Source: Oikopleura dioica (taxonomy: Eukaryota; Animalia; Chordata). Taken from it: a stretch of 64,000 nt of DNA. The translations under genes and the position numbers were made by a program. Below, piece by piece: positions 25,308 through 49,199 of this stretch. How positions within the stretch are numbered: position 1 is the first letter of the stretch; each line of letters begins with the position of its first letter. The DNA is taken from assembly GCA_907165135.1 (NCBI GenBank), contig OU015566.1, forward strand, positions 3,596,001 to 3,660,000, given 5' to 3'. The notes beneath the pieces were generated by a model, which saw only the letters and a list, made by a program, of their open reading frames with translations, had not been told where the DNA came from and searched no databases.

Positions 25308-25715
25308 CAGAGTTGCAAATTTGGCTATATTTTCGTTGAGCTGAGCTGCCCTATGTGAGAAATTCTCTGAGCTGAGCTGAGCTGACCTATTTCGGAGCTC
25401 ACTGAGCTGAGCTGGCCATTGAGCTGAGCAGACCTCATTTTAAGGTATTTGAGCTGAGCTGAGCTGAGCAGAGCAGACCCTAATTTGAGCTGAGCTGAGC
25501 TGAGTGAGCTGGGTTGAGCTGTTTTTTACTGTTTTTTAGTAGTGAAACTGGGTTAGAATCATTGAGCTGAGCTGAGCTGAGTGATTATTGTCTGAGCTGA
25601 GCTGAGCTGAGCAGATAAATTCATTTTCGAAAATCAGTGAGCTGAGCTGAGCTGAGCGACTGCTCAGCTCACTCAGCCAGCTCAGCTCACTCAGCTCACT
25701 AAATTTGCAACTCTG
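25308..25715. mobile_element. hAT-type MITE with (GAGCT)n arrays, copy 1
   Basis: TIR CAGAGTTGCAAA / TTTGCAACTCTG. 8-bp TSD GTCTGTAC at 25300-25307, repeated at 28873-28880 beyond the nested LTR element. Confidence 0.9.
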
Positions 25716-26054
25716 TGTAGTGTTTATATACTGTATTGCACTATGTATATATTTGTCCTTTCCTATCAATCAATCCTGACAGCTCAGCGCTAGCTGTTCT
25801 AGTGCTCATTATTTTCATTTTCGTGAACTCCAAATTCTCGTGCTCGTGAACTCGTAAAATCCGAGTCCACGGAATCAGTCCATGAACACGAAACCAACTA
25901 TAAAAACGAGTGCACCTTTTCTACTGCATCATTCTACTTTTCATTTTTCTGGAATAAACATCTCAGATAAAAATCACTTTGTAGTGTATAATCACTACAA
26001 ATTGGTGACTGAGTATTTTAATTTCCCTACCCCCGAAAGAGATATCCACTAAAA

Positions 26055-26795
26055 ATGTCAAACAGACATATCAGAGACAACAAAACACAAAAACCCAAGA
26101 ATGATCACGTCGAAAATGATCCTGCAATAAAAGAGCTTGCAATATTTGTTGATTCCGGAGAAATAAGCGTCAGTGAAATCAAAATGTTGCTGGCTGCATT
26201 TCGAGAAAGCGACAAGGATGTAAACATCCCTAAGCTTGAAAACCAGAATCCAGCACCGCCAACTACTCGAGTTATTCCGACGCGCGCTATGAAAAACGTG
26301 AATGTCAAAACTCCAAAATATGACTCGACTCTACCCATCAGCTCATGGATCAAAAGCCTGGAAATTTTCGGCAAAGTCTCTGCCCTTAATGATGAAGAGC
26401 TAATCACTGTAGCTTTGACCAGCTTGCTAGCAAATGACGATGGCAGCCACATTGCGTCATCACTTTCACTTAGTGAATTGAAAGATTGGAACTCCTTCAA
26501 AACAAAAATGCTCGACTGCCTTGGAAAAACGAGAGACTACTACAAGTTTCAGTTCGAGAACTACGAAAAAGGATCCGATGCTTTTGGTGTCGCGATGGCT
26601 AAACTCTGTTCCTACTTCAAGCAAGGTTATAATGTCGCAGATCTTCGTAAAATTGACGAAGAACTGCTTGTCGAGAGATTCTGTCAGTGTCAAAATGGTA
26701 AAATGAAAGAACTTCTTCTGCGGGAAAAAGACAAGCTGAATATCAAAACGATCATCAAGAGAGCAAACGAGCTAGAAAGATCAATTCGAAAATGA
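26055..26795 (+). CDS. Gag/capsid-like protein (246 aa), no CCHC knuckle
   Basis: Only long ORF in the LTR element, starting just after the PBS. PKYDSTLPISSWIKSLE resembles Ty3/gypsy capsid N-termini. Confidence 0.7.
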   Translation: MSNRHIRDNKTQKPKNDHVENDPAIKELAIFVDSGEISVSEIKMLLAAFRESDKDVNIPKLENQNPAPPTTRVIPTRAMKNVNVKTPKYDSTLPISSWIKSLEIFGKVSALNDEELITVALTSLLANDDGSHIASSLSLSELKDWNSFKTKMLDCLGKTRDYYKFQFENYEKGSDAFGVAMAKLCSYFKQGYNVADLRKIDEELLVERFCQCQNGKMKELLLREKDKLNIKTIIKRANELERSIRK

Positions 26796-27635
26796 ACACC
26801 TGCATTACAAACCGTTCTTTTCTTGCTCCAAAATGGATACCGAATATACGCACTGAAACGAAAACGACGCTTGCCTCACCAAATGGCTAATCCTAGCCAG
26901 ATCAGCGATCAAATCCAAAATTTTGTCCATTAAAAAGAATGATAACAAAAAACTGGTTTGCAGCGCGACCAGTCTAAAATGCGACCCGTTAACTTCTGAC
27001 ATGCCTTTAAACAAATGGTCTTGCGGACATCGAACTCAGCAGAGCTTCATTCAACCATTAATCACAGAGATCTTCCAATATGATATGTTATCATTATACA
27101 AAATTGTACCGCAATTCAAACAATGCAAAATCTTCTAGCAGAAGAAATCAGCCGATTCCCACAATGCGTGAATGATGTCGCCGGAGACAACGTTCAACTA
27201 CGACGTAAACTAAATGCAAAATAAAGCATTTGCATCTGCGAAAGCGATAAAATAAATAAAAAGGGGGAGGATGGATCTTCACAACCCTTGTCTTAAATCC
27301 GCATACAGCGTATGTGGTTGCCAATATTTAAAGACCATGGACGTCCGACTTACACAAAATTCAATGGTAGCTCACAGAGAAGGGACCTCAACATAAACTG
27401 ATAAATCGTCGTTAAAAACCCCATTGAATGACCGCCGCAAAACCAACAAGTCAAAGATGGCCAGCCTTTGAGATGTTCCGCTATCTTTTCTTACGTCAGC
27501 TGTTCACGTGGCCACAATCGAACAGAAGACCTTAAGTTCTGATATGTTCATTTCGAGCACGGCTGTGGAAACAACAAAATGCTACCTTTCCAATTGGCAC
27601 ATATCATTAACCTTTCTAAAATCGAAAACTTCGAA

Positions 27636-28081
27636 TATTCTTAGCGAGAATAGCGGCATTTGCACTGATATCTTCAGCGAAGGAAATATCAGCTCAACTT
27701 AAACACGTCATGCGACAGTATCAACTCAAACTTCAGCGAAGTTAAATTCAAAATCAACTAACAAGAAATCAACGACAACTCGACAAATCTTCAGCGAAGA
27801 TTTTCACCAATAATTGAAACCGCCTCCAGCTCGTTAGGAGCGGTTTATGTGATAGTCTTCAGCGAAAACATCACAGCTTACTGAAAACGCCGTCAACTTC
27901 TCCAAAAGCGCCGCACGCAAATTGATCTAGCAATGAATTGTGCGTTTTATAAATCTGCGCGTATTTTGTCAAAAATCAAAGAATTATTATCTTCAGCGAA
28001 GATAAACAAGCAAAATTATTTGGAGGATGACTCTTTGTCATGCGACTTAATGATGTATCGATTCATTCTTCAGCGAAGAAT
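27636..28081 (+). other. Array of 7 AGC-triloop hairpins within the LTR element
   Basis: Loops at 27643, 27676, 27735, 27793, 27861, 27995 and 28072. Stems differ in sequence but stay complementary. Confidence 0.8.
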
Positions 28082-29074
28082 CAAAATAATGCCTTATTAT
28101 GCCCGAGAAAAATTCCAGCACAAAATTCGCCTCGCGTTGGAACAGAATTGGAGCGCGTCACGGCTGAGCGCCCTCAGCAATTATCCCGGTCGCGCCCGAG
28201 TCCCGACTGGTACCTGGCTAGCAGCGCTAGAATCGTAAAAACGAGAAAAATCCAAAAATGAAAAATCTTGAAAATGATATCTTTATTTTTCCCCGCTCGC
28301 CCGAAAAGGATCGTGCAACGCTTTTTAGTACCAGCGATCTTCAACATCATCATTCCAGTTGATTTTCTACCCATCGCTTACATAGAGAATTTGAAGAGAA
28401 CACGCGAAATGATCTAAAACGAGCAAGCAGAAGCAGAATCAATCAAGGCGAAATACGAAAAAACTCGCCGATCAACTACGACCAATCATCTTTCCCTGAA
28501 AATCTCAGTGAAATTTTTAATTGATATATCTGTTAGAAATTTCTATTTTCCCTACGCTTCGCTTCAAATAATGAGGGAGGAATATGTAGTGTTTATATAC
28601 TGTATTGCACTATGTATATATTTGTCCTTTCCTATCAATCAATCCTGACAGCTCAGCGCTAGCTGTTCTAGTGCTCATTATTTTCATTTTCGTGAACTCC
28701 AAATTCTCGTGCTCGTGAACTCGTAAAATCCGAGTCCACGGAATCAGTCCATGAACACGAAACCAACTATAAAAACGAGTGCACCTTTTCTACTGCATCA
28801 TTCTACTTTTCATTTTTCTGGAATAAACATCTCAGATAAAAATCACTTTGTAGTGTATAATCACTACATCTGGTCTGTACTACGGTACTCAAGTAACGGA
28901 AGAATGAATAATACGTTTCAATGCTCTTCAATTTATTTTTTAGAATAAGGTCAACAGGATCATGCACAATTTTATTGTTAAAATTAGGGAAATGGATGTT
29001 TAGCCATTAATTCTTCAAGGAAGACCTAAAATACTTGAGTAGAAAATTAGAATTTCTTTATTTAAACCTGATAG

Positions 29075-29272
29075 TCATGGCCATTGGAAGTGTTGTCCGT
29101 TTTCTTCTTTCGGTTGCATGGTCGTTTGGATGCCTGAATCTTCAGCAGCCTTTGATCTCTCTTCATTCATCTCGTTGACAATCGACTGTATCAATTCATC
29201 GAGGCGTTGAACTTCTCTCATTTGCTTTTCTTGATTGCTGATCCCTTCTTTTGCTTTGTTACAGTTTTCCAT
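29075..29272 (-). CDS. Small hypothetical coiled-coil protein
   Basis: MENCNKAKEGISNQEKQMREVQRLDELIQSIVNEM..., preceded by a TTTTCTCAG acceptor and an AAGATG start context. Confidence 0.35.
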   Translation of the reverse strand: MENCNKAKEGISNQEKQMREVQRLDELIQSIVNEMNEERSKAAEDSGIQTTMQPKEENGQHFQWP

Positions 29273-29508: not shown

Positions 29509-29965
29509 CAGAGTTGCAATTTCGGCTTTATTTTTGTTGAGCTGAGCTGAGCTGCCCTGTGTGAGAAATTCTATGAGCTGAGCTGAGCTGAGCTGGCCAT
29601 TTTCGGAGTTCAATGAGCTGATCTGAGCTGAGCAGACCTTCTTTTAAGGTAGTTGAGCTGAGCTGAGAAGACCCTAATTTGAGCTGAGCTGAGCTGAGTG
29701 AGCTGGGTTGAGCTGTTTTTTACTGTTTTTTAGTAGTGAAATTGTGTTAGAATTATTGAGCTGAGCTGAGCTCAGCTGAATGATACTTGTCTGAGCTGGG
29801 CTGAGCAGAACAGATCATGTTCGAGAATAATTGAGCTGAGCTGAGCTGAATGATTATTGTCTGAGCTGAGCAGATAAATTCATTTTCGAAAATCAGTGAG
29901 CTGAGCTGAGCTGAGCGACTGCTCAGCTCACTCAGCCAGCTCAGCTCACCATATTTGCAACTCTG
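29509..29965. mobile_element. hAT-type (GAGCT)n MITE, copy 2
   Basis: Same TIRs as copy 1. TSD TCCAGAGT/TCCTGAGT (7/8). Inserted in a CCTGAGTCAGG motif. Confidence 0.85.
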
Positions 29966-30265
29966 TCCTGAGTCAGGAGTCCTGACCAAAAATGAAAAAT
30001 TTTGAAAATCGCGCGCTCCATCGCTGAGTCATTCTCTCCACCGCTGGATCACTTTTTTGCAAGAAAAAATGGGCGCGTCTCTTTGTTTTTTGACCCTTTT
30101 CCAGAGTTCATGAATTTATGAGTTTCGGCCAATGAGAGAAGAATTCTAGAAGCCTTTGCAAAGAACTTTTAAAATTGCGTTTGCCAAGTGCAAATAATTT
30201 GCCCAAAAAACCCGCCCCGTGGCCGGTTCCTAAAATCAAAACAGTTTCAGAGAATCGAATTGAAG

Positions 30266-43427: not shown

Positions 43428-46240
43428 CTTATCAGTAGACACAAAAAAAGAAGAATCTTGAAAGCTCGGAGGGCGCTCCTGAGTCGTGCGCCGCGGCCTT
43501 CTGAGACGAGGACACGGTTGGAATCTCCGCCTCCGCTACGCTCTTCAACCTCGAGAAGGAACTTGCTCTTGATTGTAACTAAAAAATTACTTTTTATTGT
43601 ACTTTTTTAATAGAAGAAAGAAGGGAAATAAAGAGATTTTTCGGAGAAAAAGAAAAAAGAATTATTCTTTGTACGTGAGTTTCAATAATCAAATGTTATG
43701 ATTCATAAATAGTTCTTAGGAATTTTTATCATTTTAAAAATATAGCTTCAAAATTGACTTTTAAAAAAACATAAAATTTTATTGTTTTTAATTATATTTT
43801 TTTATTTAAAAAATCAAAGTAAAAAATATTATGGCTTCTTATTATTATTGTGATTCTTATCAGTGGATCTTATCAGTAAATCTTATCAGTAATTAATAAC
43901 TAGCGATCGGTTAGTATTGTCTGGCAGACATTTTGTTATTGGAAAAAAATGACCAAATATTCTATTTTGAAATGGTCTATTTTCACGAAAGCGCCAGTAA
44001 AGTCTACTAGAAGCCCAATTTTTTCGACGAATAAGAGCTCATCTTTTTCACTCTTCTTCTATAAATATTTTAAGGTGTCAATTTTTGAGTTTAAAAATAT
44101 TATGATTATTGACGAAAACGTTAACCCCGTTCTACGTGGAGGGACCTTGTTGACACCCGGCATTCTATTGATGGCTAATTAGAGGTGTCTCTTCCGGAAA
44201 TAGCGTGAAGTGATGTTTTGGTTCAAAACGAACAAAAATACTTTTTCTGAAAAAAATGAAAAGAGCAAAAAACATAATTCGATCTTGTTTGATATTTGAT
44301 CAAACGATTGTCCTCGCTATATTTAGCGTTAAAATTGACTTGCTCGAAGAATGAAGCAATCGCTTCGGGGAAATATGTGTTCTGTTATGATTTGAGTACA
44401 AGAATAAGGAGCTACGGGTTGTATTCAAAACACTGTTTTTTCTCTTCGTTTGAAACTTCAAATTTTCCTCTTGAAATCTAGGTTTTATATCTAAGTTATT
44501 ATTTATACTTATTTGCTTTCGATATATATAATTATTATTATAATATAATATTTAATAAAGAATAATTAAATGACAAACATAATATATAATAATGATATAT
44601 ACGTTATATTTATATAAAAATTTGATAAATTCCGAGTATGACTTTGATACAACAAAATAATCAGATATTGGCTAACTCAAAAAATCTAGAAACCAAAAAA
44701 ATTTTCTTAATCATATGGTGCTCATTGATCAATTTTCTAAAGACGAAAGCTCGTGCGTTTTTGAGATTGAATGTAAATTTGTCATCTCCTTATCTTCTTC
44801 TTTAATTGAATATTTTTCGTGGCAAAGATTAATTTCGAACATCTCAATTTACAACGAGGCCAGCCCAAAAAAATGTCAGCGATTACGTTCGTTCAGGCTT
44901 GATTTAACTCGTTTCGGGCAGGTGGCGATAAACCGGACGGTTTCGTCTTCCACCGCAGTAAAAGGTCCGTTCAAACCCAGCTTCATCAGAAAACGGCCGA
45001 GGTGATTCAATTTCGGAACGAGACATTTGCTCAAAAGATTCATAGCTCCCGATAATTCGGTAAACTTTCAGCGAGATTTTTCTTGAAACTCAGAGCAAAA
45101 TACAAAAGTGCCTAAATCCGGGATCGCATCCTTTTATAATCTCCGAAGTTTGAGATACTCCAAGATGGCAATCTCTCTTTCGAGTTCAGTGAAAATTTCG
45201 ATAAGAGCGCAGAAGCCACTCATTTGGCAGGCAGTGATAAGGAGCGACACCGCTAGAAAAATTACGAAACGGAATTTTCGAAAGTTTTAGAAGAGGAATG
45301 CGGAATTTGATCGATTAGCCGATTGAACCTGACGTGGTTTTTTTATCAAAGAATTTTTTTACCTGAAAAAAAGGGTCTTTATTTTACGGTTTTTTAATGA
45401 AAAAACAGGAATTAACTGAAGAAGAAGGTTCTTTTATAATTCTCATTGATTATTTTCGCGAACGTGGATTCGAATTTTAGTGCTTATTTTTACTTCGGAA
45501 GAATTTTTTCCGCCCCTGTCATCATAAATCCTCCTTTTCATTTCCCCATTCTTTCATCATAACAATTTCCGAAAGCCAACGTGAGGCCAAAAAATGATCA
45601 TTTTTCGTAACAAAAATTCAAAAATGAGACAAGCATCTATCTTCCAATTCCCCAACTCCCAAATTCCAAAATTTCATTTTCAGCGAAAATTTAAAAATTC
45701 GCGATTATACGCTTCCCGCGAAAATGTTCCCGCGCTTTGCTGTTTTAAAAATGGCAGTCTTGTCCAGATTTTTCTTGCTATTTCGAGGATTTTTTTTATT
45801 TTGAATTTATTTTTTTTTCTAAAAACTGGCGCTACAAATTGAATTTTTCAACTCTCTACTATTTAGAGCATTTCTTGGAGACTGAGGTTAATTTTTACAA
45901 GAAGGTTTTTTTCTCAAATTTAATTCGAAAATCATTTTTTTGAGAAATCTTATTTGGCAATTTTTTTCCAATAGTGGACAAATAGGCTATTTGAAAAAGC
46001 CCATTGAGAAATTGGAATTGTGTAATTTGGCGAAAGCGAATTGTCGCGAAATTCGATACACTTTGTTATTCAAGGGCTCAGGTCGGGCTTATCCAATTCC
46101 TGTTATTGCAATTGCTGAGCACCGGTACAACACAATCATCACGTTCCAGCTAATCAGCGAAAAGGGATGATCATTCCTGCTCAGCGCACTTTTGAGTGAC
46201 TAGGCGACAGATTTTCGAACCATCGCGATATTACCCGCTG
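43428..46240 (-). CDS. Possible multi-exon gene with hydrophobic segments (unresolved)
   Basis: Several acceptor-bounded open segments, e.g. WNVMIVLYRCSAIAITGI, VSLLITACQMSGFCALIEIF, FTELSGAMNLLSKCLVPKL and KSKFLLEVEERSGGG...Y*. Not assembled into one frame. Confidence 0.25.
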
Positions 46241-49199
46241 TGATAAGTTTTTTCTGCAAAAAATTTGAAAAAAATTCCTTTTTATAGGTGATCTTTCAGA
46301 TCTTGATTCGGGATTTCTACAAAGGTTGCCGAGCCAAGGCCCTAAATACATGGTCAATTCAGTAAAACATCGACACTGTCAAAGTGGCAGAGAGTTAATA
46401 AGGGTCCAGGTGACCGAGATAGGAAGCGATCGCGGGGACGGGCCACTGTCACAATGCTTCACTCTGATAAGAAGAAAGGGACTTCACGGCCACCTGCCCG
46501 AGCTCGCGCAGAAGCGATTGCATAATGACCTCCTTATCGGCCCTTTTCTTGCTTAAAGTTTCGCGGGGAATTTTATTCAAGAAATAACTGCCATCAAGAA
46601 AGAATTATGGCCATAGTTTCTGACTTCGCTGCATTTCCGAGTGGCCGGAAACGCGTTACGAAGCGGGATTATCATTTAAACAGAAAGAGACAAGAAGGAT
46701 TAAGGGTGTAGCACTCGATTTGCTGAAAAGACACAGCTTAAAGCTAGTAAATTACTATATTGATAAATTGATAATTATTTCGCGCGATGAAGAATTGAGT
46801 AATCTGAAATCCCTGATTTCGACATGTCCCAAAACCAAAACCACTAATCAACTAGTATTTTCGCTAATTAGCAGTTCTGAACATAAATGCGTTGGTTTAT
46901 CTGTTGTGAGCAAATAAACGACTCATCTTCTTGGTATATTCGCCAGGCGTCACCTTGTTTGTAGCAAAACTTTTTCACTAGAAGTACGTAACTAACTGCT
47001 TAGAAATTTGGAAAATTAGGCAAATCCGCGTCAAGAAAATACTTTTACGAATTTTTTCTTTAAATTTGGTTAGAAAATTTTTTCGTCAATTTTTGTCTCA
47101 AATTTTTTTTTCAATTTTTTTTTCAAAATTTTCAGACGAAAATAAATGGAAAAAACTGTCACGTGGTCAAAAGCCACTGTAAATTTCGTTTCGAGAAAAC
47201 CCCAAAAAATTACATGGATACTCGTTTTTTGTGGTTTTGAATTTAATCATCTCGGTTTCAAAAAGTAAATTCTACAAAATCCTGTTAAAAAACGACGATA
47301 AGTAATATCTACGGTTGAACGTAACTTGAGGAAGTGAAAATGTGTAAACGGCGATTTCGTTTGATTAGATATTATGTAACCTAGCTGTGTTAGGATCATA
47401 GAAAGCAGCGCGTATTTGGTACTAAACTCGCCGTATCACTTGCTTCCCGATGCATATGCAAAAATAAAATGTGCGCAACACTTTGGATTACAGATTTGCT
47501 TTGCATTTTAATCGATAGGTCATTCGCTTCCGCGATATTCAGGAAATTAAGTGTAATGAATAAATTTGTAAAAAGAAAAATAAACAAAAAATGCTTTTTA
47601 TAAGTCGAAAATGGTGTGAAAATCGAAGAAATGATTGTTATTTCATTTTTTGTAGATGGTTGGATAATTTTTAATTGAAAACTGGGCGGCGATGAAAACT
47701 AAAACAAGGCCACGGTGGCGGACTAATATTTTGAGTCCAGCGCATTCTCAACCTCGCCACTCATTATTGCGGTCGGCAAGGTGACGCTCAAGAATTTACC
47801 TTTTACTTATTTTTATCAAAAATGACGACTATTTTTGCTAAAAATAATTTTATAAAATTTTTTTTAAAATTGATGTTTAATTAAAAAAACATATTAAATT
47901 TTCATTTTAATTAAAATATTTTTTTATTAAAAAATTTGTTTAAAGATAATTAAAATAAAAATAAAATATTCTTTTCTTTGATATTCAAAAACTAATCTGT
48001 TTTATTTCAGTTAAAAATTCGCAACGAAAAAAAGAACGTGACCGCTGTTTCCAACAATTTTCGCCCGCTGCCAAACCAAGCGTCTCCAAATCTCCGGCAA
48101 AGCCACGTGAGTAAAATCATTACAATCCTTTTATCTTTAGTTCCACAATCTTCTTCTCTATCGCGAAAAGCCAATTATCCGCTGCCCAAAGAACTGCCAA
48201 TAATTTCGTCAGCGAAGAACAAAAAATAGGTAAGCTTTCCAAAGTGATTTTTTCAAGATGAAAATCTGAAGAACGGGAAAATTAAGGGTATCAACAATGA
48301 TTTCAATTATATCATTTAAGGGCGTCCTCAAATGATTAAGAATATCAAAGAGCGACTTGAATTGATTAAACTGAATTGAAAAATTCTGGAAAAATAGTTT
48401 CAAAAAATCAAAAATCTTAAATGAGAATTTCTGTCGGAAATTGTCAAAATAACATTCCGCTTAGCGGAAATGGCGACACGCGTAGGGTTTGAAGGAGAGT
48501 CGGAAATGGCGCAGAAGATGTTCTACATTCTAATAGGAAATTATCATAGTAGAATCAACCGTTCAGAACAGTTTTATCGAATTCGCCTTAGAAAATTATT
48601 CACCGTTTTTTTCGCATAAAATCGCAAAAAATAGGCTCTAACGAAAAATCGCTGTTTATTGGCCGGAGAGCTAAATTAAGGCTTCTTATTGGCTGAAATT
48701 TTTCTTGAGAATATTTTTTTATAAAATGTTTTTACGGTAAAATGAACTTTTTCTGGGTCATTGAAGAAGGAAATATTATTTTCTACTTGTTTAATTATTT
48801 TTAATCATTTATAAAAACGTGTTAACAAGAAGCTTCTTTTGAAGATCCTTTAATATTCAGTCAATTATCGATCCATAAAAACTATGTTAAAATCGACTCG
48901 TTCTGAATCAAAAAGTACAGAAACAAAAATAAAGTAAAAAGCTGGTCGTCTGATTTTTTTCTCGGGAGTCAGGTGCACTCTTCCTGAACATGTCCCAGAG
49001 CGTGTCACTTTGCGGCGAGAAAAAATTACCAGTTGCAGCTTCGATTTCGCAAATCTAAAACTGCTCATCTTTTTCGTCATTTTAATTTTCAGTTCAATCT
49101 TTTTCAAATTAATTTCCCACGGCCGAATGCGTCAAATTTTCTTTTTGGAAAAAAATATCCAAAATGAGCTCGGCAACCTGTGCGAAAACCGGAGTCTGG

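What the first reader, a model, noticed from the sequence alone, without database searches (positions are those of the whole stretch)
27636..28081. Array of seven covarying AGC-triloop hairpins in the non-coding body of the gag-only element
Seen: TATTCTT-AGC-GAGAATA (27636, closing U.G), CTGATAT.CTTC-AGC-GAAG.GAA.ATATCAG (27665), AACTTC-AGC-GAAGTT (27729), AAATCTTC-AGC-GAAGATTT (27785), TGTGAT..TTC-AGC-GAA..ATCACA (27848), TTATCTTC-AGC-GAAGATAA (27987) and ATTCTTC-AGC-GAAGAAT (28065). The loop is invariant, the outer stems change compensatorily, and the spacers are unrelated. Loop-to-loop spacing is 33, 59, 58, 68, 134 and 77 nt, and a stemless AGC sits at the midpoint of the 134 gap (27929). 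The U.G pair favours a plus-strand RNA structure. This is not a simple tandem repeat, so it implies selection on structure. Inference: a multivalent cis-acting RNA signal, such as a packaging/Gag-capsid or trans-Pol recruitment site, or a localisation or export element, that lets a pol-less element with a knuckle-less Gag propagate. I know of no description of it.
Basis: partly seen in the sequence, partly recalled or inferred. Interest (0 to 1): 0.85.

Follow-up and report, generated by a model that had tools for sequence, protein, structure and literature searches.

The report
Hairpin array in a gag-only retroelement
A young, pol-less LTR retroelement carries at least eleven small sense-strand hairpins in its non-coding body, all with the same AGC loop on different stems, which looks like a selected multi-site RNA tag (most plausibly for being packaged by a helper element), although no second copy could be found to test this.

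Summary
All seven hairpins fold as described. Four more AGC-triloop hairpins lie in the same non-coding body, giving 11 between 26952 and 28230.

- **Not chance:** 27100-28250 holds 8 perfect triloop palindromes, 7 with an AGC loop. In 2000 shuffles the AGC count had a mean of 0.024 and a maximum of 1.
- **Covariation:** stems covary while the loop stays invariant.
- **Origin:** spacers are unalignable apart from one paralogous unit pair, and TRF finds no tandem repeat.
- **Host element:** a 3153-bp LTR element with identical LTRs, a TCTG target duplication, a PBS and PPT, and one capsid-like Gag ORF. It has no detectable pol remnant.
- **Gag family:** relatives in marine metagenomes are autonomous. 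Their Gag ends in a CCCH zinc finger, and the window's Gag stops before it.

Three limits apply. No other copy of this lineage exists in any searchable collection. The array is absent from the held parts of relatives. The wobble-pair argument for the plus strand is weak (-56.1 against -54.0 kcal/mol).

Two other fingerless gag-only relatives carry their own repeated hairpins. My best reading is a multivalent RNA protein-binding platform, probably for encapsidation by a helper. That function is inferred, not shown.

The parts
25712..25715 (+). Target-site duplication TCTG, left copy
   Evidence: Read; the same 4 nt follow the 3' LTR at 28869-28872.
25716..25999 (+). 5' LTR, 284 bp, with TG...CA ends (TGTAGTG...CACTACA)
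   Evidence: 100% identical to 28585-28868 (family D3). The end CACTACA is conserved in relatives L003, L133 and L136.
26003..26015 (+). Primer-binding-site-like TGGTGACTGAGTA, 3 nt after the LTR
   Evidence: Read. TGGTGACTGA is conserved after the LTR end in L003, L133 and L138.
26055..26795 (+). gag ORF of 246 aa. It has a capsid-like fold and ends before the CCCH finger that relatives carry.
   Evidence: ORF. 54-60% identity to P0001-P0003. Alignment. Model pLDDT 85, with best fold matches Arc, PEG10, PNMA2, Ty3 and HIV capsids. No Pfam hit.
26952..26973 (+). Hairpin 0: ACTGGTT.GC-AGC-GCGACCAGT, with one U.G pair
   Evidence: Local MFE listing. dG -8.3 on plus, -6.4 on minus.
27131..27145 (+). 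Hairpin A: TCTTCT-AGC-AGAAGA, the only one closed by U-A
   Evidence: Pair probability 0.8-0.99.
27240..27300 (+). Conserved block with an internal polypurine run (AAAAAGGGGGAGGA at 27258-27271)
   Evidence: 79% identical over 62 nt to L131 733-789, and the only non-gag similarity found to any relative.
27299..27317 (+). Hairpin B: CCGCATAC-AGC-GTATGTGG, with one G.U pair
   Evidence: dG -8.5 on plus, -5.0 on minus. Pair probability about 0.99.
27636..27652 (+). Hairpin 1: TATTCTT-AGC-GAGAATA, with a closing U.G pair
27665..27692 (+). Hairpin 2: CTGATAT.CTTC-AGC-GAAG.GAA.ATATCAG. The inner part is ambiguous (AGC triloop or AGCGAA hexaloop).
27729..27743 (+). Hairpin 3: AACTTC-AGC-GAAGTT
   Evidence: Its unit is paralogous to that of hairpin 7.
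27785..27803 (+). Hairpin 4: AAATCTTC-AGC-GAAGATTT
27848..27875 (+). Hairpin 5: TGTGAT.GT.CTTC-AGC-GAAA.AC.ATCACA. It has a C/A mismatch on plus, which would be G.U on minus.
   Evidence: dG -5.9 on plus, -9.7 on minus.
27987..28005 (+). Hairpin 6: TTATCTTC-AGC-GAAGATAA
   Evidence: (z -7.8).
28065..28081 (+). Hairpin 7: ATTCTTC-AGC-GAAGAAT
28218..28230 (+). Hairpin C: CTAGC-AGC-GCTAG
   Evidence: Lower local pair probability, 0.32.
28573..28582 (+). 3' polypurine tract GAGGGAGGAA, 2 nt before the 3' LTR
   Evidence: Read. A similar tract sits before the LTR start in L133 and L138.
28585..28868 (+). 3' LTR
   Evidence: family D3.
28869..28872 (+). Target-site duplication TCTG, right copy
   Evidence: Read.

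Best explanation
The non-coding body of this gag-only LTR retroelement is transcribed as part of its genomic RNA, where it also serves as the 3' UTR of gag. It displays at least 11 short hairpins. Each presents the same three-base loop AGC, usually on a C-G closing pair, on stems of differing sequence.

I read this as a multivalent platform for an RNA-binding protein that recognises both the loop sequence and the hairpin shape. The most likely partner is the Gag of the autonomous helper element. That Gag, unlike this element's own, carries a C-terminal CCCH zinc finger. Many weak sites would let the parasitic RNA compete for encapsidation into the helper's particles.

The array probably grew by duplication of a hairpin-bearing unit. 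It was then kept by selection on pairing and loop identity while the spacers decayed.

Shown: the hairpins, their excess over chance, the invariant loop, the compensatory stem changes, the element's anatomy and youth, and the missing finger.

Inferred: that RNA rather than DNA is the active form, that a protein binds it, that the protein is helper Gag, and that the outcome is packaging.

My confidence that it is a selected RNA protein-binding platform of some kind is about 0.6. My confidence that it serves packaging by helper Gag specifically is about 0.4.
For: - **Excess and loop identity.** 7 AGC-loop perfect palindromes in 1.15 kb, against a shuffle mean of 0.024 and a maximum of 1 in 2000. 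7 of 9 triloop palindromes in the body have AGC, P = 3e-12. A covariance model finds 10 hits in the element and only 2 comparable ones in the other 61 kb on both strands.
- **Structure kept through sequence change.** All 8 stem positions show changes on both sides, with 82.5% paired against 59% shuffled and 41-50% slid. Hairpins 0, A, B, C and 1 lack the CTTC/GAAG core yet keep a stem and the AGC loop. The paralogous units of hairpins 3 and 7 differ by an AA/TT to TT/AA flip. The two hairpins with inner defects (2 and 5) have the longest outer stems.
- **Spacers have decayed.** They can no longer be aligned, and TRF finds no repeat.
- **Orientation.** All 11 loops read AGC on the sense strand. 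Local folding gives pair probability above 0.5 for 8 of 10 hairpins on plus, against 4 of 10 on minus.
- **Recently mobile and dependent on a helper.** Identical LTRs and a TSD. No pol remnant. Relatives have a protease and RT downstream of gag.
- **The finger.** The family's Gag carries a CCCH finger with weak similarity to RNA-binding CCCH fingers of MBNL1 and RBM22. The window's Gag ends before it.
- **Room for a packaging signal.** The 5' UTR is only about 55 nt, so there is little space for a classical leader signal.
- **Recurrence in relatives.** Two other fingerless gag-only relatives carry repeated hairpins of their own. L138 has an 86-nt repeat of 2.7 copies whose invariant 22-nt block is a hairpin. 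L131 has two TAG-triloop hairpins 54 nt apart.
Against: - Only one copy exists in all the data I could reach, so every covariation count is among paralogous hairpins within one sequence, not across copies or species.
- The AGC array is absent from the held parts of every relative: gag, leader, LTR, start of pol, one 3' ORF end, and the two other gag-only bodies. The true helper was not found, so whether it carries AGC hairpins is unknown.
- Energies give no real strand preference, -56.1 against -54.0 kcal/mol, and hairpin 5 is better on the minus strand. DNA-level or antisense readings are therefore not excluded.
- Individual hairpins are marginally stable, -2.6 to -8.5 kcal/mol. In a global fold several pair with each other instead of locally.
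- The link between a CCCH finger and a triloop rests on analogy only.
- Tandem repeats in non-coding parts of LTR elements are common and often have no known function.
Confidence: 0.4

Rival explanations
1. The same RNA hairpin array, but bound by a host RNA-binding protein rather than helper Gag. It would serve nuclear export of an unspliced RNA, localisation, or stability. One specific option is shielding a gag mRNA with a 1.8-kb 3' UTR from nonsense-mediated decay.
For: All the structural evidence above applies. The array starts about 157 nt after the gag stop and fills what is formally a very long 3' UTR. The AGC array is not seen in relatives, which fits a lineage-specific capture of a host factor. 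From established knowledge, retroviruses use the CTE and RTE export elements, and Rous sarcoma virus has an RNA stability element downstream of gag.
Against: No known host-factor motif matches a C-AGC-G triloop, and there is no Rfam hit. Known export and stability elements are not arrays of minimal triloop hairpins. Nothing in the data points to a particular host protein.
Confidence: 0.2
2. A neutral remnant. A tandem repeat of about 60-90 nt, whose unit happened to contain a palindrome, arose by reverse-transcriptase template switching in a hypervariable non-coding region and is decaying. Palindromes persist through mutational mechanisms such as intrastrand template-switch correction of quasi-palindromes, not through selection.
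For: Spacings of 58-77 nt in the central part. The units of hairpins 3 and 7 are demonstrably paralogous. A relative, L138, shows a young 86-nt tandem repeat at the equivalent place. The genome as a whole has more small palindromes than shuffles predict, 3.3 per kb outside the element. From my own knowledge, tandem repeats in the 3' non-coding region of plant LTR retrotransposons are well known.
Against: Under neutral decay, stems and loops should erode as fast as spacers. Here the spacers are unalignable, yet the loop is invariant in 11 of 11 and the stems stay paired through changes on both sides. A palindrome-correcting mechanism would not hold the unpaired loop constant. Five hairpins share only loop and shape with the rest, not the core. 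The outer four hairpins do not fit a regular period.
Confidence: 0.15
3. A DNA-level array. The palindromic core CTTCAGCGAAG (TTC-N3-GAA) would be a binding site for a dimeric transcription factor, and the cluster an internal enhancer, promoter or insulator. A known example of such an array is the 12 Su(Hw) sites in the gypsy leader.
For: The core is a TTC-N3-GAA palindrome in 6 of 11 sites. Energies are strand-neutral. Tissue-specific expression of Oikopleura Tor elements is reported to be driven by internal regulators and an internal promoter (PMC4402516).
Against: Five hairpins lack the TTC/GAA core altogether yet keep stem and loop. Palindromy extends 2-8 bp beyond the core with different sequences, which a sequence-reading dimer does not require. 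The asymmetric centre AGC points the same way in 11 of 11, although duplication could explain that.
Confidence: 0.12
4. Structures that act in the single-stranded cDNA or template during reverse transcription. They would be pause sites that promote template switching or recombination, or modulate strand synthesis near the internal polypurine block.
For: Hairpins form equally well on either strand. A conserved internal polypurine run lies inside the array at 27258-27271. Repeated 11-15-nt cores are natural substrates for template jumps and could explain how the array expands.
Against: There is no reason for an invariant loop in a mere pause site. The hairpins are weak. No precedent known to me requires 11 of them.
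Confidence: 0.05

Closest known systems
TR-GAG non-autonomous LTR retrotransposons (plants; PMC4350172)
   Same: Short (under 4 kb) LTR element with PBS, PPT and TSD, a single ORF for Gag and no pol, presumed to be mobilised in trans. The window element is 3153 bp with exactly this layout.
   Different: TR-GAG was described in plants. This element's relatives come from marine metagenomes, and the window's genes (astacin and EGF domains) point to an animal host. Its Gag belongs to a CCCH-finger family and has lost the finger. As far as I know, no hairpin array is described for TR-GAG.
Alphavirus genomic RNA packaging signal (PMC6283419 and the work it cites)
   Same: A stretch of about 400 nt with a series of stem-loops that share a short conserved loop motif (GGG) on non-conserved stems. 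It is needed for selective encapsidation. This is the best functional analogue.
   Different: It lies in a coding region of a plus-strand RNA virus and has larger loops and a different motif. There is no homology, and here the function is only inferred.
Gammaretroviral Psi and VL30 (PMC4859993; my own knowledge for the GACG stem-loops)
   Same: VL30 is a non-coding LTR retrotransposon packaged by a helper's Gag through structured RNA signals. Psi contains paired stem-loops with a conserved tetraloop.
   Different: Psi sits in the 5' leader and has two such loops, not eleven. Recognition is by a CCHC nucleocapsid. Here the leader is about 55 nt, and the array lies downstream of gag.
Dispersed coat-protein-binding hairpins of small RNA viruses and engineered MS2/PP7 arrays (PMC6475782 for the concept)
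   Same: Many weak hairpins with a shared loop motif act cooperatively on a multimeric capsid protein.
   Different: A different virus class, and the concept is itself debated for some viruses (PMC6475782). There is no sequence relation.
Su(Hw) binding-site array of Drosophila gypsy (my own knowledge)
   Same: A dozen copies of a short motif, separated by unrelated spacers, in the non-coding part of an LTR retroelement.
   Different: Those sites are read as double-stranded DNA and need no palindromic flanks. Here the pairing covaries, and the core sequence is dispensable in 5 of 11 sites.
Tandem repeats in the non-coding 3' region of LTR retrotransposons (my own knowledge; a live example is L138)
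   Same: Same position in the element, same likely origin by unit duplication.
   Different: The window array is no longer a detectable tandem repeat. Only the hairpins have survived.

Membership tests
LTR retroelement, gag-only non-autonomous type (TR-GAG-like) | Two direct long terminal repeats with TG...CA ends, flanked by a short target-site duplication | tested here: met
   284-bp LTRs, 100% identical (D3). Ends TGTAGTG...CACTACA and a TCTG duplication on both sides.
LTR retroelement, gag-only non-autonomous type (TR-GAG-like) | PBS next to the 5' LTR and a polypurine tract next to the 3' LTR | tested here: met
   TGGTGACTGA follows the LTR and is conserved in L003, L133 and L138. GAGGGAGGAA precedes the 3' LTR. 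The primer tRNA was not identified, and there is no tRNA gene in the window.
LTR retroelement, gag-only non-autonomous type (TR-GAG-like) | A single ORF that encodes Gag | tested here: met
   246-aa ORF. Homologous to proteins that sit upstream of a retroviral protease ORF. Its predicted fold best matches Arc, PEG10, PNMA2, Ty3 and HIV capsids, though with weak E-values of 0.02 or more. No Pfam hit.
LTR retroelement, gag-only non-autonomous type (TR-GAG-like) | No protease, RT, RNase H or integrase | tested here: met
   No other ORF has a Pfam hit. tblastn with PR and PR-RT fragments of relatives finds nothing in the body.
   No Tor reference sequence and no eukaryote genome collection was available. 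Relatives come from marine metagenomes including Tara Oceans PRJEB4352, which is compatible but is not a test. PMC4402516 does not mention a zinc finger, hairpins or non-autonomous copies.
Any described RNA family (Rfam 15) | A match at or near a family's gathering score | tested here: not met
   No match at gathering thresholds in the window. In 25500-29100 there are only sub-threshold chance-level hits, none on the array apart from two with E above 8.
Tandem repeat / satellite | Head-to-tail units that align with each other | tested here: not met
   TRF finds nothing in 26800-28600 except a 7-nt microrepeat. Spacer-against-spacer alignments are at chance level apart from one 10-nt match.
CRISPR array (considered because the metagenome scan returned some) | Near-identical repeats of 23 nt or more, separated by unique spacers of similar length | tested here: not met
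   Only an 11-15-nt core is shared. Spacings run from 33 to 336 nt. The array lies inside a eukaryote-type LTR element. The true CRISPR arrays L043 and L059 have 37-nt repeats.
Dimeric transcription-factor site cluster of TTC-N3-GAA type | Every site keeps the half-site sequence; the flanks are free | tested here: not met
   Five of 11 hairpins lack TTC/GAA, and the flanks are constrained to pair.
Multi-hairpin encapsidation signal (functional class, not a homology family) | Several hairpins with a shared loop motif on variable stems | tested here: met
Multi-hairpin encapsidation signal (functional class, not a homology family) | Specific binding by the capsid or nucleocapsid protein, and dependence of packaging on the hairpins | not testable with these tools
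   This needs binding and packaging experiments, and the helper element was not found.

The most novel reading that the evidence does not exclude
A lineage of LTR retroelements uses a single CCCH zinc finger at the end of Gag, instead of CCHC knuckles, to read a three-base hairpin loop. Their pol-less, finger-less parasites have repeatedly evolved natural 'MS2-like' arrays of such hairpins to hijack the helper's particles. The window has 11 AGC triloops, L131 has two UAG triloops, and L138 has three copies of a 22-nt hairpin. Hairpin identity would co-evolve with the helper's finger.
Probability: 0.2. Interest if true: 0.8.

Novelty: new variant of a known kind. Interest (0 to 1): 0.6.

Why it matters
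How LTR retrotransposons, and especially their non-autonomous parasites, get their RNA chosen for packaging is known in detail for very few elements.

This array offers a compact, readable candidate signal with a clear grammar: an invariant AGC loop, a C-G closing pair and a free stem. That grammar predicts which changes should kill function and which should rescue it. The array also sits in an element that has evidently moved recently.

If it is a Gag-binding array, it would show a parasite amplifying a packaging signal. It would also tie an unusual CCCH-finger Gag to a defined RNA target, and give a natural multivalent RNA tag.

If instead it is a decayed repeat, it is still a clean case for measuring how far palindromes can outlive their surroundings without selection.

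Tried and rejected
- **Other copies in the window:** none, neither LTR nor body.
- **Other copies by protein:** the window's Gag is not on record. The closest proteins among 5.8 billion clusters and 1.84 billion representatives are about 60% identical.
- **Pattern scans for two cores 40-70 nt apart:**
  - The viral collection gave 7 loci, all unrelated coding repeats.
None is homologous to the element. The only multi-hairpin loci were CRISPR arrays or short tandem repeats.
- **Gag profile against viral contigs:** nothing.
- **Contigs of eight Gag relatives (L001-L003, L131-L139):**
  - All are short, 0.9-4.3 kb.
  - None contains an AGC-hairpin array.
  - One longer contig (2866 nt) of the L131 type could not be read.
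- **Last protein search:** I ran no further search on the spurious ORFs over the array. A species whose real Gag is absent from the collection will not have those ORFs either.
- **Known RNA families:** none match.
- **Degenerate pol in the body:** none found.
- **Is the internal polypurine block the real PPT of a shorter ancestral element, followed by an old LTR?** Rejected, because neither here nor in L131 does the following sequence resemble the family's conserved LTR start.
- **'Stemless AGC at the gap midpoint':** rejected as chance.
- **Wobble pairs as a strand indicator:** rejected as too weak.
- **Host organism:** not identified. The window has no rRNA, tRNA or other Rfam gene. I do not take it for human. 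Its element's relatives occur only in marine metagenomes, and it shows compact genes with introns of about 45 nt.
Full report
**What is there**

The finding lies inside a compact LTR retroelement at window 25716-28868.
- Its two 284-bp LTRs are identical (family D3). They begin TGTAGTG and end CACTACA, and are flanked by a 4-bp duplication, TCTG.
- Three bases after the 5' LTR comes TGGTGACTGA, which is conserved after the LTR end in three metagenomic relatives. A purine run, GAGGGAGGAA, precedes the 3' LTR.
- The only sizeable sense ORF, 26055-26795 (246 aa), has no Pfam match. It is 54-60% identical to proteins from marine metagenome contigs. In those contigs the protein is followed by an ORF with a retroviral aspartyl protease, and further on by RT motifs.
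- An AlphaFold model made with 40 family members has pLDDT 85. Its best PDB matches are all capsid proteins (Arc, PEG10, PNMA2, dArc1, Ty3, HIV, BLV), though with weak E-values.
- So the ORF is a Gag capsid. The 1.8 kb between its stop and the 3' LTR shows no trace of pol.
- No second copy, and no solo LTR, is in the window.

**The observation**

The array is larger than reported. Using the same rule (AGC triloop, sense strand), four more hairpins lie at 26952-26973, 27131-27145, 27299-27317 and 28218-28230. That gives eleven between 26952 and 28230.
- Ten of the eleven have G after the loop.
- Nine are closed by C-G, one by U.G and one by U-A.
- Five of them lack the CTTC/GAAG core and share only loop and shape with the rest.

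The excess over chance is large.
- In 27100-28250 there are 8 perfect triloop palindromes with stems of at least 5 bp, 7 of them with AGC. In 2000 dinucleotide shuffles the total had a mean of 1.39 (maximum 6) and the AGC count a mean of 0.024 (maximum 1).
- In an unbiased list of all such palindromes in the body, 7 of 9 have AGC (P = 3e-12).
- The rest of the window (61 kb) has three AGC-loop palindromes and one GCT-loop palindrome.
- A covariance model built from ten hairpins finds only two comparable matches elsewhere in the window, on either strand.

**Covariation and origin**

On the loop-anchored alignment of ten hairpins, 82.5% of cells pair, against 59% after shuffling (0 of 500) and 41-50% when the partner is slid. 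All eight stem positions show changes on both sides. These rows were partly chosen for being palindromes, so I treat this as descriptive and rest significance.

Spacers do not align with each other beyond chance, and TRF sees no repeat. The exception is the pair of units around hairpins 3 and 7. They share a 10-nt exact match and further flanking similarity. Within that clearly paralogous pair the stem differs by AA/TT against TT/AA, a double compensated flip.

The array therefore grew at least partly by unit duplication. Since then the spacers have decayed, the stems have changed while staying paired, and the loop has not changed at all. The two hairpins with inner defects (2 and 5) have the longest outer stems. 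This pattern is what selection on shape plus loop identity produces. Neutral decay of a repeat does not predict it, and a palindrome-correcting mutational mechanism would not hold an unpaired loop constant.

**Strand**

- Wobble pairs favour the plus strand in three hairpins (26952, 27299, 27636).
- The C/A mismatch of hairpin 5 becomes G.U on the minus strand.
- Summed energies are -56.1 (plus) and -54.0 (minus) kcal/mol.
- What does point to the sense transcript: all eleven loops have the same orientation, and local pair probabilities in context are higher on plus (8 of 10 hairpins above 0.5, against 4 of 10 on minus).
- In an unconstrained global fold, several hairpins pair with one another because their arms are alike. 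That is expected for repeated palindromes.

**Relatives**

A profile search of 1.84 billion representatives found 99 family members. Nearly all complete ones end in a C-x8-C-x5-C-x3-H finger. In a PDB profile search this finger resembles RNA-binding CCCH fingers of MBNL1 and RBM22, though weakly. The window's Gag stops just before the position of the finger.

I fetched contigs for eight relatives.
- The autonomous ones (L001-L003, L133-L137, L139) have no AGC hairpins in the parts held.
- **L131**, a fingerless relative, shares a 62-nt block with the window's body, 27240-27300, containing an internal polypurine run. Downstream it has two strong hairpins 54 nt apart, both with a TAG triloop on different stems.
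- **L138**, also fingerless, holds the complete internal part of a gag-only element (PBS, gag, 1.45 kb non-coding, PPT, LTR start). Its body carries an 86-nt tandem repeat of 2.7 copies at 83% identity. The one invariant 22-nt block of that repeat is itself a hairpin.

So loss of the finger together with repeated hairpins in the non-coding body recurs in this family, with a different hairpin in each lineage. The sample is small, and the L131 case rests on two hairpins.

No copy of the window's own lineage exists in any collection I could query.

**Mechanism**

An invariant short loop on free but paired stems, repeated many times on one RNA, is the signature of a hairpin recognised by a protein that assembles into multimers. 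The element cannot make its own particles' enzymes, its Gag has lost the family's only nucleic-acid-binding module, and its leader is about 55 nt. Yet it has moved recently.

The reading I commit to is an array that recruits the helper's finger-bearing Gag, so that the parasite's RNA is encapsidated. The alphavirus packaging signal, a series of stem-loops with repeated GGG loop motifs (PMC6283419), is the nearest functional precedent. VL30 and TR-GAG elements (PMC4859993, PMC4350172) are the nearest precedents for the parasitic lifestyle.

I put about 0.6 on 'selected RNA protein-binding platform' and about 0.4 on 'helper-Gag packaging signal'. The rivals and my weights:

| Rival | Weight |
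|---|---|
| Host-factor platform for export, localisation or protection of a long-3'-UTR RNA | 0.20 |
| Neutral remnant of a repeat | 0.15 |
| DNA-level array of transcription-factor sites, as internal regulators are reported for Tor elements (PMC4402516) | 0.12 |
| cDNA-level role in reverse transcription | 0.05 |

**Comparison and novelty**

The element as a whole is a TR-GAG-like non-autonomous LTR retrotransposon, and all structural criteria tested were met. I could not test whether it is a 'Tor' element.

The array matches no Rfam family. It is not a tandem repeat, not a CRISPR array, and not a simple transcription-factor site cluster (five sites lack the core). My literature searches returned no paper describing such an array, or a CCCH-finger Gag, in a retrotransposon. 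That is only as good as the library searched.

I rate it a new variant of a known kind, namely multi-hairpin cis-acting RNA signals of retroelements and RNA viruses.

**Verdict**

Interest is 0.6. This is a clean, testable and apparently undescribed feature, held back by resting on a single copy.

**Handling notes**

I do not take the window for human (see Tried and rejected). I describe where Gag ends but not how it could be extended.

Noticed in passing
window 25308-25716 and 29509-29966: Two copies, 4194 bp apart, of a repeat of about 420-460 bp built of GAGCT runs separated by short unique stretches. It ends in an inverted GAGCT/AGCTC segment that draws faint miRNA-precursor-like Rfam hits. 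The LTR element is inserted exactly at the end of the first copy.
   Followed up: partly
P0001-P0101; L001-L003, L131-L139: A family of LTR-retroelement Gag proteins (99 representatives at E up to 1e-3, from marine and other metagenomes). Its C-terminus carries a CCCH (C-x8-C-x5-C-x3-H) finger instead of the usual CCHC knuckle. My literature search found no description of this.
   Followed up: partly
window 27240-27300; L131 733-789: An internal polypurine run (AAAAAGGGGGAGGA) with about 40 nt downstream is the only non-gag sequence conserved between the window element and a relative. It resembles the 3' PPT, so it may be a central PPT. In both sequences a hairpin follows directly.
   Followed up: partly
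L138 2024-2256: An 86-nt tandem repeat (2.7 copies, 83% matches) in the non-coding body of another fingerless gag-only element. Its invariant block ATTGCAGCAGATCCGACTGCAA forms a 6-bp hairpin with a 9-nt loop.
   Followed up: partly
L131 1117-1133 and 1170-1188: Two hairpins with the same TAG triloop on unrelated 7- and 8-bp stems, 54 nt apart, downstream of a fingerless gag. A longer contig of the same element (2866 nt, JGI sample 3300072015) could not be read.
   Followed up: partly
L137 1500-2761: Downstream of a truncated gag-protease, the 7-mer AGCGAAG (the 3' half of the window's core) occurs 4 times and AGCGAAGC 3 times. It is partly inside perfect palindromes, with no consistent hairpin context. 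Whether this stretch belongs to the element is unknown.
   Followed up: no
L043 (3360 nt) and L059 (1311 nt), minus strand: Prokaryotic CRISPR arrays whose 37-nt repeat contains the very hairpin AATCTTC-AGC-GAAGATT. This is a coincidence turned up by the pattern scan, with no relation to the element.
   Followed up: partly
L003 329-349: A perfect 9-bp palindrome with an AGA triloop (ATTCTTTCG-AGA-CGAAAGAAT, dG -8.3) in the 5' part of gag, in the autonomous relative closest to the window's Gag. Its outer stem resembles that of window hairpin 7.
   Followed up: no
window 27817-27846: The strongest local hairpin of the body (dG -11.7 to -12.8 kcal/mol). It has a 9-nt loop that begins AGC and sits between hairpins 4 and 5.
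   Followed up: no
window 45672-45694 (+) and 47827-47849 (-): Isolated AGC-triloop palindromes in AT-rich intergenic DNA (ATTTTC-AGC-GAAAAT and TATTTTT-AGC-AAAAATA). These are the only non-element matches above 20 bits to the hairpin model and are probably chance.
   Followed up: partly
L133 337-1260 (same ORF partly present in L134; not called in L135): These contigs run ORF, PPT, LTR, PBS, gag, pol, which looks like an assembly through the LTR. The 307-aa ORF just upstream of the PPT sits where an env would, and has no Pfam match.
   Followed up: no
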